This document shows, in pieces, positions 57,441-60,617 of a stretch of DNA of 64,000 nt. Source of the stretch: Ostrea edulis (taxonomy: Eukaryota); contig NC_079172.1 in the NCBI RefSeq assembly GCF_947568905.1, positions 8,742,001 through 8,806,000 of the forward strand, in the 5' to 3' direction. The notes beneath the pieces are model-generated. The model made no database searches. It was given only the letters and a program-made list of their open reading frames with translations, and had not been told where the DNA came from. The position numbers and the translations under genes were made by a program. Every line of letters starts with the position of its first letter. Within the stretch, counting starts at the first letter, position 1.

Positions 57441-60400
57441 ATGAGTGAGGAAAACAGACCCTACGGGATCCGTGATAGTTTGGGAAGAACGCCTCTTCAT
57501 CTAGCAGCAGAAGACAGTGATGTGGACAAAATGGAGGAGTTAGTGTGTACTCGTGGATTTGACGTCAATGCACAAAATGGCCGAGGTAATACACCCATGC
57601 ACTGTCTGTTTGACAAAATTATCATTGACGATCTGGACAAGCTCAAAAGGGCAATGTCAATTCTCTTAGAGAATGGCGCCGATTTGAATATTAAGGATAA
57701 ATTCCAGGATACACCTCTTCATGCTGTGTTTTACAGCTATGACAATCTTACACCAGAAATCATCAGATTTTTATTAACAAACTCCAATGGCAAATTCAAC
57801 ATAGAGGCTCAAAACAATGTCGGCTATACAGTCTTCTACAGATTCCTGACTGAATTCCACGAAAGCCTGAAGGAAGATGACAATTTTTCAGATTTGATCC
57901 AACAAACAGAATCATTTATCAATGACTTCATGGATGGAACAATATGTACACCATGTCCAGTCAAACGTCTATTGAACATGAAAGATTCCTTTGGTTGTTC
58001 AGCATTTCAGTTGTATGTCAATCGTGTTGATAACAATATTGAAACAATCAAGAAAATGATTAAGTTCGGTGCCGATGTGAACACAATGTCAAAGATAGGC
58101 GTTACACCGCTTATGGACGTCGTCTTGGATAGAGTTGCCCCAATAGCAGAAGTTTTGCTCAAATCGGGTGCAAACGTCAATAACAGAGACATATTTGGAC
58201 AGACAGCTCTTTACAGAGTTCTTACCAAGGATTGCTTTGACTTACTAAAGCAATATGGAGCGGATTTTACTATCCGAGACAAATTCGGGCGACCACCAAT
58301 AACGGACGTTTATCTGTACACCCCTGAAGACACACCAAGGAGTGGAGTGGTCATTTCAGAAGAAGCATCGCAACGCCAGCCTTTATACCAGTTATTTTTA
58401 GAAAATGGAGTGAGTGTTCGTGAGACTGACAATTTTGGTTCATCTCTTCTTCACTATGCGGCTTGGTATGGTGCTCCCATTATGGCGTCAGCTCTTATTG
58501 ATCATGGTGTTTCACTTGCTGTCGTTGATAATGATGGCATCTCCCCTGCCGAATTGGCTAAAAGGGTCGGAAACTACGAACTCTGCAGTTTGCTGAGTGG
58601 CAATCCAAATGAAGTAGATTTCAAGGATCCAGCTAAACGGCACTATGTAAATCTACTGATTTACCACGAAGATGTATCAAATATTGACAACGCCTTGCAT
58701 GAAGTCTTGGATTTTCGTGAAAATCCTTCAGAATTGTTAAAGAATTTGATCAATTCACCGAGAATGGGACTTGCTGCCAAAGAGCCCGAGGCATACGAAG
58801 TTAAAAATGAAATATTAAAACTGATGAACAAAATTGCCATTTCTATAGGAAGAGCAGATCCCGAATTTAGATGTACGGTTTTTCCTACCGGAAGTTCGGA
58901 AGATGGAAGTAAAATTGGGGAGGCTGATGAGTTCGACTTTACGTTTTGTTTAGATTTCTTTTCAGAAGAATGCGCACCTTATCAAGACAAAGATACGCTG
59001 AATAGTGGATTTGCAACACTGAAGTTAAAATCTTTTCATGAATCCCATCCTTTAGTCAAGTATACAACAGATGAATATGTAATCGAGTCGTACATTGTGC
59101 GAGACACTTTCCAAGACCTTTTCACGAGTGCTGTCAATGAACCAGAGATCTGGAACCAGAATGCTTTTTATTTTGATGGACTCCTAAACTTTCCACTCGA
59201 CAAACCAATTCTAAACATGGAGGTGCACTGGTGTGGGCGGATAATGAAGAGCATAATCATTAGCATTGATGTTGTCCCTGCAGTAAGAACTGGGGATTGG
59301 ATACCAATGGAGATGAGAAAGATGGACCTTGACGTCCCTGTACGAAAAGTTTCAATACAAGACGAGTGCTTTCTCTTGTTCCAACCACCCGAGATGCGTG
59401 ACAAACAAAGGAGGAAATATTTGAGGATATCGAGATTTTCCAGCGAGGTAAAGTTCCTGAAGAGCCTGAGTAATGTCTTCCTAGAAAGTTATGCTGCTGC
59501 CAAAGTATTGATATGTGATCGTTTTTGTCCACGACTGTTATTTACGGAAGATTTAGATATAGAACAATTGTTTTGTGAAAGCTCTTCAAGCACAAACGGT
59601 TCAATCGAAAATATCCGTGAAGATATGGCATCCGATGAGGACGAGGTTGAAAGTGAAGATGTGAGCCAATCTTCGGGATCCAAACACTCGCACATCTCGG
59701 ACGCCGAAGATCTGGAAACTTGTTCCGGGATAATTCAGGGGACTATTCTGTTCAAGCAAGGAGCGCTGCGTGATCTTACTTCATGCGTTGTTGAAATCGA
59801 CCAAACTTTACGAGGTTGTAAGTTGTTTGTTCCAAAAGAGAGCGTGCAACTGAAAGTTTCTGATCTTTCGTTCTCAACACAAAACAGAGAATTAACGGCC
59901 AGAATGTGCACCGTTATTCGGTCCATCCAGAAAGATACAAGCAGATGGATCATGTATGGACCCTCGTCGAATATTCCTAAGAATGAAACACTGGATGCAG
60001 TTATAATGGATAGTTTATCTAGAGAGGAAAATCAAAACTTGACAGTTGCAGAATGGTTAACTTGTACTTTCCCATCGATCAGACAAGACTCGGGTGATGA
60101 CATTGATGACAACACTGAAATGGATCAGACTCAAGAAGACGGTGACCACATTCCCGGTAAAGAAACTACGAATGAAAATTCTGTAGAGTTCGCGAATATC
60201 AGCAAAGAGGCCATTGATGAGAGATCTACAGTTTGTCCGGAACCCGTTCCAGAACCCGAGACCGAAACGAAGAATATCACTTGGGAGGGTGGGGAAATTG
60301 TTGATGCTTACGATACTATATCTAGTTACATGCTGAAGAGCTGTCTCTTTTATGTTGCTGTGGATCTAAAAGACAATGTTGATATCAATCAGTTGGATAT

Positions 60401-60617
60401 TACAATTAAACTTTTTGAAAAACTAGGAGAATGTGCAGATGTACAGAGACTTGATTCCTTCTTTTTGCCATATCTAGACGTTTTTACTTTTGCCAATGAA
60501 CACATTAAATTGATACCAAAGGAGGAAATCTCAGAAAAGATTCAAATTCAATGCAGACGAATAAAACTATTTTGTGAAGTCGTACTTGGGATTTTGAAAC
60601 AGAACACCCGAGCATAA
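57441..60617 (+). CDS. Ankyrin-repeat / Mab-21 (cGAS-like, cGLR-type) nucleotidyltransferase fusion, 1058 aa from the first ATG, intronless
   Basis: About 10 ANK repeats (GRTPLHLAA, GNTPMH, QDTPLH, GVTPLM, GQTALY, GSSLLHYAA...) at ~57480-58600. NTase motif TGSSEDGSKIGEADEFDF (58887-58940), third acidic residue in SIDVVPA (~59268), RISRFSSEVKFL, and C-terminal SSYMLKSCLF. AATAAA at ~60680. The ORF track opens at GTG 57411; the first ATG is 57441. Confidence 0.88.
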   Translation: MSEENRPYGIRDSLGRTPLHLAAEDSDVDKMEELVCTRGFDVNAQNGRGNTPMHCLFDKIIIDDLDKLKRAMSILLENGADLNIKDKFQDTPLHAVFYSYDNLTPEIIRFLLTNSNGKFNIEAQNNVGYTVFYRFLTEFHESLKEDDNFSDLIQQTESFINDFMDGTICTPCPVKRLLNMKDSFGCSAFQLYVNRVDNNIETIKKMIKFGADVNTMSKIGVTPLMDVVLDRVAPIAEVLLKSGANVNNRDIFGQTALYRVLTKDCFDLLKQYGADFTIRDKFGRPPITDVYLYTPEDTPRSGVVISEEASQRQPLYQLFLENGVSVRETDNFGSSLLHYAAWYGAPIMASALIDHGVSLAVVDNDGISPAELAKRVGNYELCSLLSGNPNEVDFKDPAKRHYVNLLIYHEDVSNIDNALHEVLDFRENPSELLKNLINSPRMGLAAKEPEAYEVKNEILKLMNKIAISIGRADPEFRCTVFPTGSSEDGSKIGEADEFDFTFCLDFFSEECAPYQDKDTLNSGFATLKLKSFHESHPLVKYTTDEYVIESYIVRDTFQDLFTSAVNEPEIWNQNAFYFDGLLNFPLDKPILNMEVHWCGRIMKSIIISIDVVPAVRTGDWIPMEMRKMDLDVPVRKVSIQDECFLLFQPPEMRDKQRRKYLRISRFSSEVKFLKSLSNVFLESYAAAKVLICDRFCPRLLFTEDLDIEQLFCESSSSTNGSIENIREDMASDEDEVESEDVSQSSGSKHSHISDAEDLETCSGIIQGTILFKQGALRDLTSCVVEIDQTLRGCKLFVPKESVQLKVSDLSFSTQNRELTARMCTVIRSIQKDTSRWIMYGPSSNIPKNETLDAVIMDSLSREENQNLTVAEWLTCTFPSIRQDSGDDIDDNTEMDQTQEDGDHIPGKETTNENSVEFANISKEAIDERSTVCPEPVPEPETETKNITWEGGEIVDAYDTISSYMLKSCLFYVAVDLKDNVDINQLDITIKLFEKLGECADVQRLDSFFLPYLDVFTFANEHIKLIPKEEISEKIQIQCRRIKLFCEVVLGILKQNTRA

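What the first reader, a model, noticed from the sequence alone, without database searches (positions are those of the whole stretch)
57441..60617. Intronless ankyrin-array / cGAS-like nucleotidyltransferase: candidate immune receptor with a protein-sensing module
The sequence shows about 10 ANK repeats, a helical linker (LLKLMNKIAISIG) and a Mab-21/cGAS-type NTase core that keeps the G-S dyad, the E-F-D metal ligands and the third Asp (SIDVVP), so it is predicted active. Established knowledge: cGAS-like receptors make cyclic dinucleotides that signal via STING, the characterised ones mainly sense dsDNA or dsRNA, and the family is expanded in bivalves. Inference: an N-terminal ANK array could gate the enzyme by binding a protein ligand or by autoinhibition, an NLR-like sensor-effector logic. 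A 3.2-kb intron-free CDS beside intron-rich genes suggests retroposition or recent lineage-specific duplication.
Basis: partly seen in the sequence, partly recalled or inferred. Interest (0 to 1): 0.85.

Follow-up and report, generated by a model that had tools for sequence, protein, structure and literature searches.

The report
Oyster ankyrin-fused cGAS-like enzyme gene
This is a real, conserved and probably expressed oyster gene that fuses ten ankyrin repeats to a cGAS-like signalling enzyme with an intact active site; the fusion type is already catalogued but unstudied, and this copy adds an unusual 246-residue insert and an acidic surface that argue against DNA or RNA sensing.

Summary
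Window 57441-60617 (+) is one uninterrupted 1058-aa CDS with about 10 ANK repeats, then a complete cGAS/cGLR nucleotidyltransferase (VIA Z 29.8 to mouse cGAS, 28.1 to oyster Cv-cGLR1). G484-S485, E497/D499 and D610 are invariant in 56 relatives.

The gene is under purifying selection (omega 0.09-0.15). It is syntenic with its Saccostrea orthologue. One run gives a transcript-like, unspliced contig that ends 17 nt after an AATAAA.

- ANK-cGLR fusions are already catalogued (Li et al. 2023), though none is characterised.
- The "helical linker" is the NTase's own N-terminal helix.
- Intronlessness is ancient and family-wide (Pinctada, a crinoid, at least 78 Mab-21 matches here). It does not indicate recent retroposition.

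New here:
- The enzyme is acidic (core pI 5.0) and lacks a zinc thumb, so a nucleic-acid ligand is unlikely.
- A 246-aa insert sits at the cGAS KKH-loop (site C) position. It is two acidic linkers around a conserved beta-rich module of unresolved fold, and it marks one subclade.
- The ANK groove is predicted to clasp the NTase N-lobe (ipSAE 0.75, best control 0.00). Conservation does not independently confirm this.

Verdict: a new variant of a known kind, of moderate interest.

The parts
57376..60716 (+). Probable unspliced mRNA: 65-nt 5' UTR, CDS and 99-nt 3' UTR
   Evidence: Run X4 gives one gap-free 3341-nt contig at exactly these coordinates. It has zero depth on the unique flanks 56291-57078 and 60822-61215. 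The library type of X4 is not on record.
57441..60617 (+). Single-exon CDS, 1058 aa plus stop
   Evidence: An in-frame TAG lies at 57390-57392. dN/dS is 0.15 against the Saccostrea echinata orthologue.
57483..58616 (+). Ankyrin array, about 10 repeats (aa 15-392)
   Evidence: Pfam Ank families, E down to 4e-28. DARPin and ankyrin PDB hits. Repeat register from the conserved G/TPLH positions.
58617..58727 (+). Conserved ANK-to-NTase connector (aa 393-429)
   Evidence: Many invariant positions in 9 orthologues, e.g. H409-E-D-V412 and E427-N-P429. dN/dS 0.155.
58728..59543 (+). cGLR NTase: N-terminal spine helix, catalytic N-lobe and first part of the C-lobe (aa 430-701)
   Evidence: AF2 pLDDT is mostly above 90. 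VIA Z 29.8 to mouse cGAS. Pfam Mab-21.
58890..58895 (+). G484-S485 of the activation loop
   Evidence: Invariant in 56 relatives. Aligned to GS of Cv-cGLR1 and cGAS.
58929..58937 (+). E497-F498-D499 metal ligands
   Evidence: E497 and D499 are invariant in 56 relatives. Aligned to EFD of cGAS and cGLR1.
59229..59249 (+). Family-specific extended beta-hairpin W597-K603 (G599 and K603 at least 90% conserved); predicted ANK contact
   Evidence: It is a 6-residue extension relative to mouse cGAS in the profile alignment. Conservation. Contacts.
59268..59270 (+). Third catalytic Asp, D610
   Evidence: Invariant. Aligned to the Asp of the mouse cGAS I-S-V-D motif.
59544..59723 (+). Insert, acidic Ser/Asp/Glu-rich disordered linker 1 (aa 702-761)
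   Evidence: pI 4.05 and dN/dS 0.24. pLDDT below 50 over aa 724-761. Length and sequence vary among orthologues.
59724..60071 (+). Insert, conserved beta-rich module (aa 762-877): about 8 strands plus 2 helices, fold unresolved
   Evidence: pLDDT 55-91 when modelled within the NTase. dN/dS 0.12. Homologous module in Pinctada: phmmer E 3.5e-6 and hhalign probability 95.6%. No match in Pfam, PDB or the atlas.
60072..60281 (+). Insert, acidic disordered linker 2 (aa 878-947)
   Evidence: pI 4.05 and dN/dS 0.31. pLDDT below 50.
60282..60614 (+). Remainder of the C-terminal helical lobe (aa 948-1058), including the S962-Y963-x-x-K966 nucleotide-pocket motif
   Evidence: Pfam Mab-21_C, 21.7 bits. 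pLDDT 93-98. Aligned to the mouse cGAS S-Y-H-V-K motif.
60694..60699 (+). AATAAA poly(A) signal (a second copy lies at 60682-60687)
   Evidence: Sequence. The X4 contig ends at 60716, 17 nt downstream.

Best explanation
The locus encodes a functional cytosolic cGAS-like receptor of the ankyrin-fused class.

Shown:
- An intact, selectively constrained single-exon gene that is conserved across oysters and syntenic with Saccostrea.
- A complete bilobal cGAS/cGLR fold with every catalytic residue in place.
- An acidic enzyme with no zinc thumb.
- A 246-residue insert at the position of the human cGAS KKH loop (DNA-binding site C). The insert holds a conserved beta-rich module between two acidic disordered linkers.
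- At least three STING loci in the same genome.

Inferred: the enzyme makes a cyclic di- or oligonucleotide that signals through one of those STINGs, and it is not switched on by dsDNA or dsRNA.

Most likely mechanism, from a model and not from experiment: the concave finger-tip groove of the ANK solenoid clasps the NTase N-lobe. It does so on the face that in human cGAS forms site C: the helix at aa 550-571, the KRKR-loop equivalent at 575-588, the family-specific hairpin at 596-604 and the hairpin at 652-655. This leaves the catalytic cleft free. A protein partner, or a modification of the acidic Ser-rich linkers, would alter the clamp together with the adjacent insert module, and that would set the conformation of the activation loop and hence catalysis.

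My sub-odds:
- Real, expressed gene: about 0.9.
- Catalytically active NTase: about 0.75.
- Non-nucleic-acid regulation: about 0.6.
- The ANK clamp as the regulatory switch: about 0.35.

The overall confidence given is for the statement as a whole, short of the clamp detail.
For: Gene integrity and constraint: ORF and start. dN/dS 0.09-0.15 on all folded parts. Orthologues at 56-67% identity in Saccostrea and Crassostrea. SNRNP27 lies downstream on the same strand in both genomes.

Expression: a transcript-like contig at 57376-60716 that ends 17 nt after an AATAAA.

Fold: the Foldseek top 50 are all cGAS or Cv-cGLR1, E about 1e-11. VIA gives Z 29.8, rmsd 3.0, 333 residues aligned to mouse cGAS; Z 28.1 to Cv-cGLR1; Z 27.5 to Tc-cGLR. 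The family profile matches Cv-cGLR1 at E 8e-26 and cGAS at 8e-24.

Active site: G484, S485, E497, D499, D610, S664 and K688 are invariant in 56 sequences and across 46 divergent full-length relatives.

Charge: overall pI 4.65, NTase core 5.0. Li et al. 2023 report that nucleic-acid-sensing cGLRs have pI above 8.5 and that acidic ones probably bind other ligands.

No zinc thumb: the mouse cGAS Cys-rich segment has no counterpart in the profile alignment.

STING_LBD is present at 3 or more loci.

ANK docking: ipSAE 0.75/0.74/0.77 against a best control of 0.00. That mark was reached by 51 of 78 solved complexes and 2 of 108 mismatched pairs; on eukaryotes, by 39 of 65 solved pairs and 2 of 126 unrelated pairs. 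The runs share at least 57% of contacts and the partner pLDDT is at least 75. Contact residues G599/K603 and S334/H338/Y339/W342/D363 are conserved family-wide. The hairpin is a family-specific extension.

Site C composition comes from PMC8365253.
Against: - No biochemical data exist for any ANK-fused cGLR.
- Expression rests on one run whose library type is not on record.
- The docking test was run on two halves of one polypeptide, folded without alignments. That category was not calibrated.
- Interface residues are not more conserved than the domain averages among orthologues (NTase 0.71 vs 0.78; ANK 0.79 vs 0.73, p = 0.15). Family-wide conserved positions are not enriched in the interface either (p 0.2-0.9).
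- A stably docked ANK could be a passive scaffold.
- Acidity is only a proxy for ligand class. I could not compute a surface electrostatic map.
- The insert module folds poorly on its own (pLDDT 52.9).
Confidence: 0.5

Rival explanations
1. Constitutive scaffold model. The ANK array is a permanently docked structural extension, or a localisation and partner-recruitment platform. It does not switch the enzyme. Activity is set by transcription, by phosphorylation of the acidic Ser-rich linkers, or by an unknown ligand in the canonical groove.
For: The predicted docking face is away from the catalytic cleft and from the equivalent of cGAS site A. All 46 relatives examined keep an ANK array, which fits an obligate structural role. 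Li et al. found several acidic cGLRs active without an added ligand.
Against: An array of 10 repeats under purifying selection along its whole length (omega 0.15) is more than a scaffold would need. The N-terminal repeats and the convex face are left free by the model. There is no direct evidence either way.
Confidence: 0.25
2. Classical nucleic-acid sensor. Like cGAS, Cv-cGLR1 or Dm-cGLR1, the NTase is activated by dsDNA or dsRNA, and the ANK array only adds partners.
For: The nearest solved structures are dsDNA- or dsRNA-activated enzymes. The spine helix and both lobes are intact.
Against: The NTase core has pI 5.0 and net charge -12, and the whole protein has net charge -65. Nucleic-acid-sensing cGLRs have pI above 8.5. 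There is no zinc thumb. The site C elements are replaced by the predicted ANK contact and an acidic insert.
Confidence: 0.12
3. Non-enzymatic Mab-21-like protein. The fold is kept for protein binding or a developmental role, and no nucleotide signal is made.
For: Many Mab-21 family members have no demonstrated activity. The Pfam Mab-21 scores are low (30.9 and 21.7 bits). Other first-stage notes on this genome describe degenerate Mab-21 copies (unverified).
Against: All catalytic and nucleotide-pocket residues are invariant across relatives that share only about 22-30% identity. That is hard to explain without catalysis.
Confidence: 0.06
4. Recent retrocopy or decaying duplicate without function. 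This is the strong form of the reader's retroposition idea.
For: The CDS is intron-free. Interspersed repeats lie directly upstream and downstream.
Against: omega is 0.15 with dS about 1.3 against Saccostrea. The position is syntenic. Intronless relatives occur in Pinctada and a crinoid, and all paralogues here are intronless. A transcript-like contig exists.
Confidence: 0.02

Closest known systems
ANK-fused cGLRs catalogued by Li et al. 2023 (Cell / bioRxiv 10.1101/2023.02.22.529553; Fig 1C, S2A, Table S2)
   Same: An N-terminal ankyrin array fused to a cGLR NTase with a complete active site. These occur in bivalves and cnidarians and were proposed there to mediate protein-protein or protein-ligand interaction. 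Bivalve accessions with Ank domains are listed in their Table S2.
   Different: None was characterised biochemically in that paper. The 246-aa insert in the C-lobe, the acidity of this subfamily and a docked ANK-NTase arrangement are not described there. I did not find the C. gigas orthologue accession in the stored supplement text, which was truncated.
Cv-cGLR1 (Crassostrea virginica, PDB 8GJW) and the cGLR1 chain 8GJY
   Same: Best sequence-profile match (E 8e-26) and VIA Z 28.1 over 332 residues. Same GS / EFD / D motifs. Also from an oyster.
   Different: About 17% identity. According to Li et al. the C. gigas and C. virginica cGLRs they tested are dsDNA-activated and belong to the basic class. 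This protein is acidic, ANK-fused and carries the insert.
Vertebrate cGAS (e.g. mouse 4O6A, human 6CT9)
   Same: Bilobal Mab-21 NTase, Z 29.8, rmsd 3.0 A, 333 of 361 residues. Spine helix, catalytic triad and S-Y-x-x-K pocket motif are all present.
   Different: No zinc thumb and no basic DNA-binding surfaces. The site C elements (alpha-region, KRKR loop, KKH loop; PMC8365253) correspond here to the predicted ANK-contact face and to the insertion point. There is no disordered basic N-terminus; an ANK array takes its place.
NLR / STAND-type sensors with repeat-domain autoinhibition (works-like comparison only)
   Same: The logic of a repeat array fused to an effector or signalling enzyme, with intramolecular docking that a ligand could release.
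   Different: No NACHT/NB-ARC ATPase. The output would be a nucleotide messenger and not oligomerisation. The analogy is inference only.

Membership tests
cGLR (cGAS-like receptor; Mab-21 NTase) | Bilobal cGAS/Mab-21 nucleotidyltransferase fold | tested here: met
   Pfam PF03281 at 30.9 bits, above its cut-off. AF2 model with pTM 0.76. Foldseek top 50 are all cGAS/cGLR. VIA Z 29.8 / 28.1 / 27.5.
cGLR (cGAS-like receptor; Mab-21 NTase) | Complete active site: G-S loop, [E/D]-h-[E/D] and a third acidic residue | tested here: met
   G484-S485, E497/D499 and D610 align to solved cGLR1 and cGAS. They are invariant in 56 relatives.
cGLR (cGAS-like receptor; Mab-21 NTase) | Synthesis of a nucleotide second messenger | not testable with these tools
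   Needs an in vitro NTP assay read by TLC or LC-MS.
cGLR (cGAS-like receptor; Mab-21 NTase) | A downstream receptor (STING) is encoded in the same genome | tested here: met
   PF15009 STING_LBD scores above its cut-off at C2:30.30 Mb, C9:29.37 Mb and C9:26.53 Mb. Functional coupling was not tested.
ANK-fused cGLR architecture class (Li et al. 2023) | Ankyrin repeats on the same polypeptide as the cGLR domain | tested here: met
   46 of 46 relatives carry Ank and 42 of 46 score for Mab-21.
Nucleic-acid-sensing cGLRs (cGAS, Dm-cGLR1, Cv-cGLR1 type) | High pI (above 8.5) with a basic ligand groove | tested here: not met
   NTase core pI 5.0, whole protein 4.65, against the criterion. No surface map was computed.
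Vertebrate cGAS | Zinc-thumb H/C cluster between the R-x-S-x-x-x-x-E motif and the K414-equivalent helix | tested here: not met
   No His/Cys cluster lies between S664 and K688. The mouse cGAS Cys-rich segment is unmatched in the profile alignment.
OAS family | Closest sequence or fold relatives are OAS enzymes | tested here: not met
   No OAS chain among the 43 PDB profile hits, nor in the listed top 50 by fold.
Recent processed retrogene | An intron-containing parent gene, young age and a non-syntenic position | tested here: not met
   All relatives are single-exon. dS is about 1.3. The SNRNP27 neighbour is conserved. An ancient retroposition at the base of the family cannot be excluded.

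The most novel reading that the evidence does not exclude
This Ostreida subfamily would be the first cGLR regulated by a protein ligand or a post-translational cue instead of nucleic acid. The ANK groove holds the NTase N-lobe on the site C face as a latch. A lineage-specific beta-module, inserted through the KKH loop on acidic, possibly phosphorylatable tethers, acts with it as a composite sensor. Displacing the latch would switch on synthesis of a STING-activating nucleotide.
Probability: 0.2. Interest if true: 0.85.

Novelty: new variant of a known kind. Interest (0 to 1): 0.55.

Why it matters
The ligands of most animal cGLRs are unknown, and every activating ligand found so far is a nucleic acid. 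ANK-fused, acidic cGLRs are the most obvious candidates for a different ligand class.

This gene gives a concrete construct set that can be tested. The domain boundaries are defined, a docking interface is predicted (K603 with H338/Y339/W342), there is a deletable insert, and candidate STING partners lie in the same genome. Oysters are also hit by OsHV-1 and Vibrio disease.

If the enzyme turns out to be an ordinary or inactive family member, the value is limited to annotation of a large bivalve gene expansion.

Tried and rejected
1. Fold of the insert module. The isolated model was poor (pLDDT 52.9, pTM 0.34). The VIA wide search gave a best Z of 4.0, with mixed SH3b and PH-like hits at noise level. 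The atlas shape search stayed below TM 0.5. The atlas feature search returned only Mab-21_C clusters below 0.8. The PDB profile search found nothing. No fold is assigned. The 'beta-barrel' or PH-like idea remains a lead only.

2. Homology of the insert across the whole insert-bearing clade. It is solid for Pinctada, marginal for paralogue L002/P0017 (58%), and undetectable for Mytilus, P0018 and the crinoid. A single origin rests on the tree (16 of 17 in one clade, SH-aLRT 100; a quick tree, because the careful search did not finish). It does not rest on sequence.

3. Evolutionary support for the ANK-NTase interface. Two conservation tests were not significant.

4. The Logan contig carrying the 99%-identical protein P0001 (L019). 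It is collinear with 57311-61055 and breaks at repeat edges, as the genomic runs do. It is therefore probably genomic and was not counted as RNA evidence. Runs X3, X5 and X7 are likewise genomic.

5. Synteny inside the window. Only the gene itself matched the Saccostrea locus. The SNRNP27 neighbour lies about 14 kb beyond the window end.

6. Literature on the specific orthologues (LOC105335263 and others): nothing found.

7. Not done: a search for the insert module in other protein contexts with the two remaining large protein searches, because I judged them unlikely to reach past 23% identity; surface electrostatics of the model, because no coordinates were accessible; and placement relative to all characterised cGLRs in one tree, because their sequences were not exportable.
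Full report

Yes. The window holds one exceptional open frame, 57411..60617 on the + strand. The next longest ORF in the 64 kb is 486 aa, and it lies in a purine-rich low-complexity stretch. The first ATG is at 57441, and an in-frame TAG lies at 57390-57392. The CDS is therefore 1058 aa.

Pfam finds five ankyrin families over about aa 15-395 (E down to 4e-28). 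The Mab-21 NTase domain covers aa 488-623 at 30.9 bits (cut-off 24.1). Mab-21_C covers aa 956-1021 at 21.7 bits, just under its cut-off. Ten ANK repeats can be counted from the conserved Gly / T-P-L-H register. The G-S dyad, E-F-D and the S-I-D-V-V-P Asp are present. They align to the same motifs of solved cGLR1 and mouse cGAS.

**2. What organism and gene family?**

The genome is 895 Mb in 52 contigs and belongs to an oyster. The nearest proteins are "uncharacterized protein" entries of Saccostrea echinata (67%), S. cucullata (65%) and Crassostrea gigas (56%). All have the same length and the same ANK + Mab-21 architecture.

An exhaustive representative search with the NTase half found 279 clusters at E <= 1e-3. 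In most of them the NTase starts 400-700 residues into an 800-1100-aa protein. Of 46 scanned, 46 carry ANK repeats and 42 score for Mab-21. Named members come from Pinctada, Mytilus, Ruditapes and Mactra, and from the crinoid Anneissia japonica.

ANK-fused cGLRs are thus a large, old clade. Li et al. 2023 already listed ANK and TPR fusions as minority cGLR architectures. They proposed protein-interaction roles but did not characterise any, and bivalve accessions appear in their Table S2. I found no paper on this gene or its orthologues.

**3. Is it a live gene?**

- Against the Saccostrea orthologue, dN/dS is 0.15 overall. By region it is 0.15 for ANK, 0.09 for the NTase N-part, 0.12 for the insert core and 0.13 for the C-lobe. 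dS is about 1.3, which is saturated, so the pair is old.
- SNRNP27 lies downstream on the same strand in both genomes, so the position is orthologous.
- Of four runs laid on the locus, three cover the intergenic DNA evenly and are genomic. The fourth, X4, has no depth on the unique flanks. It yields a single gap-free 3341-nt contig at 57376-60716, which ends 17 nt after an AATAAA at 60694-60699. This is what an unspliced, polyadenylated mRNA would give. However, the library type of X4 is not on record and contigs cannot prove transcript ends, so I call expression probable.
- The Logan contig with the 99%-identical protein looks genomic and was not counted.

**4. Intronlessness**

That is not supported. 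The following are all single-exon:
- the Saccostrea orthologue, 3156 nt for 1051 aa;
- the Pinctada relative, 3213 nt for 1070 aa;
- the crinoid relative, 3390 nt for 1129 aa, flanked by sulfatase genes on a 2.5-Mb scaffold;
- five ANK-Mab-21 paralogues in this genome.

Most of the 78 or more Mab-21 matches in this genome lie in uninterrupted frames of 600-730 aa. Being intron-free is an ancient family trait.

**5. Fold and active site**

AlphaFold2 on aa 430-1058 with a 56-sequence alignment gave pLDDT 79.3 and pTM 0.76, with the NTase mostly above 90.
- The Foldseek top 50 are all cGAS or Cv-cGLR1.
- VIA-align gives Z 29.8 (rmsd 3.0 A, 333 of 361 residues) to mouse cGAS, 28.1 to Cv-cGLR1 and 27.5 to beetle cGLR.
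- The family profile hits Cv-cGLR1 (E 8e-26), cGAS (8e-24), Tc-cGLR (4e-12), Mab21L1 (1.5e-11) and MB21D2 (4.5e-6). No OAS chain appears.

The refuting condition "a different NTase class" is therefore not met. G484, S485, E497, D499, D610, S664 and K688 are invariant in 56 relatives, and the core ones are invariant across 46 full-length proteins of about 22-30% identity. The R-x-S...E and S-Y-x-x-K pocket motifs align to those of cGAS.

It is not a linker.

**6. What is unusual**

(a) Charge. The whole protein has pI 4.65 (net -65). The NTase core without the insert has pI 5.0. Li et al. report pI above 8.5 for dsDNA- and dsRNA-sensing cGLRs and suggest other ligands for acidic ones. There is also no zinc-thumb Cys/His cluster.

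(b) The insert. A 246-aa insert (aa 702-947) lies between the K688 helix and the S-S-Y motif. In cGAS that position is the short loop carrying K427-K428-H429. Together with the KRKR loop and the 261-286 helix, this loop forms human DNA-binding site C (PMC8365253; positions mapped through the profile alignment to mouse cGAS).
- The insert consists of two acidic, Ser-rich, poorly conserved and disordered linkers (pI 4.05; omega 0.24-0.31; pLDDT below 50).
- These flank a conserved module, aa 762-877 (omega 0.12), of about 8 strands and 2 helices.
- Most ANK-cGLRs have 0-25 residues at this position. Inserts of 106-275 aa occur in 17 of 56 sequences. Of these, 16 form one clade in a tree built without the insert (SH-aLRT 100, quick tree).
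- Sequence homology of the module is solid only within oysters and to Pinctada.
- Its fold could not be assigned.

(c) ANK docking. A controlled complex prediction of ANK (aa 20-395) against NTase (aa 440-1058) scored ipSAE 0.75, 0.74 and 0.77, against 0.00 for all three controls.
- The tool's mark was reached by 51 of 78 solved complexes and 2 of 108 mismatched pairs. On eukaryotes it was reached by 39 of 65 solved pairs and 2 of 126 unrelated pairs.
- The runs share at least 57% of contacts, and the partner pLDDT is at least 75.
- The ANK contacts recur about every 33 residues from 47 to 376. They are the repeat finger-tips and inner helices of the canonical binding groove.
- The NTase contacts are 556-581, 586-588, 596-604 and 652-655. 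By the alignment these are the equivalents of the site C helix, the KRKR loop, a hairpin that is 6 residues longer than in cGAS and conserved in this family (G599 and K603 at least 90%), and the 365-369 hairpin named in PMC8365253. No catalytic residue is in the interface.

Caveats on (c): two halves of one chain are an uncalibrated case, and the model shows confidence, not binding. Interface positions are not more conserved than the domain averages, and family-wide conserved positions are not enriched in the interface. A few predicted contact partners are conserved family-wide (K603, G599, H338, Y339, W342, S334, D363).

**7. Mechanism**

I commit to the following. This is a catalytically competent cGLR that makes a nucleotide messenger for one of the three or more STINGs in the genome. 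It is regulated by something other than nucleic acid. The ANK solenoid is docked on the site C face of the N-lobe, next to the insert. The ANK array and insert together form the regulatory surface.

What is shown: gene integrity, fold, active site, acidity, insert anatomy and the presence of STING. What is inferred: the product, STING coupling and the ligand class. What rests only on a model: the clamp. The rivals are a constitutive scaffold, a classical nucleic-acid sensor, a non-enzymatic Mab-21 protein and a dead retrocopy. They are scored in their own section.

**8. Novelty and verdict**

The ANK-cGLR architecture is known, and the orthologues are in public databases as uncharacterised proteins. 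On that basis alone this would be a new member of a known kind. Three features were not found described in the library I could search: the clade-specific insert at the site C loop, the acidic no-thumb NTase, and the predicted ANK clamp on the same face. I therefore rate it a new variant of a known kind.

Interest is moderate (0.55). It is a well-defined candidate for the first non-nucleic-acid-regulated cGLR, but everything mechanistic still needs the bench.

The scan holds other first-stage notes on Mab-21 genes in this genome and one on this same insert. They are unverified and were used only as context.

Noticed in passing
window 46001-48200: A purine-rich low-complexity stretch: GC skew 0.47, AT skew 0.32, a (GA)n run at 47769-47817 and degenerate 17-37-nt G/A-rich repeats. 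It produces several overlapping spurious ORFs on the - strand, up to 486 aa.
   Followed up: partly
window 55700-56093, 56882-57472 and 61216-61600: Interspersed repeats flank the gene. Their depth in genomic runs is 100-500 times that of the single-copy gene body. Genomic contigs break at 57311 and 61348. The transcript-like contig starts only about 65 nt downstream of the upstream repeat edge, so the promoter may lie in or next to a repeat.
   Followed up: no
G000 genome-wide, especially contig C3 (18.6-97.6 Mb): At least 78 Mab-21 NTase matches, most in uninterrupted frames of 600-730 aa and many in clusters on C3 (e.g. 19.6-20.0 Mb, 36.8-38.9 Mb). This is a large intronless cGLR expansion distinct from the ANK-fused clade.
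   Followed up: partly
G000:C7:44130906-44144590 (L003, L004): A tandem pair of ANK-Mab-21 paralogues (927 and 921 aa) about 10 kb apart. They lack the insert.
   Followed up: partly
G000:C4:61165943-61169689 (L007): An ANK-Mab-21 copy with one in-frame TAG inside the NTase match. It may be a pseudogene.
   Followed up: no
L018:8001-11390 (Anneissia japonica scaffold): A crinoid ANK-cGLR with an insert at the same loop nests inside an otherwise bivalve clade (SH-aLRT 100 for the clade). It is a genuine genomic gene flanked by sulfatase genes. The patchy distribution is unexplained: ancient origin with losses, or transfer.
   Followed up: partly
P0027, P0028 (Ruditapes philippinarum, 2255 and 2287 aa): Giant relatives in which the cGLR NTase sits 1500-1800 residues into the protein. 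Also, 4 of 46 ANK-cGLR relatives carry a zf-MYND finger.
   Followed up: no
P0007 (672 aa, Logan contig 4117 nt): An ANK-less protein 57% identical over the whole NTase plus insert. It may be a truncated isoform, a fragment or a partial gene call in a Crassostrea-like sample.
   Followed up: no
window 57428 and 57576-61105: Another individual (run X7) differs by a 3-nt deletion in the 5' UTR and about 20 single-base differences across the gene and its 3' flank. Contig L019 differs at 16 of 3745 positions. This is an ordinary level of polymorphism for an oyster.
   Followed up: no
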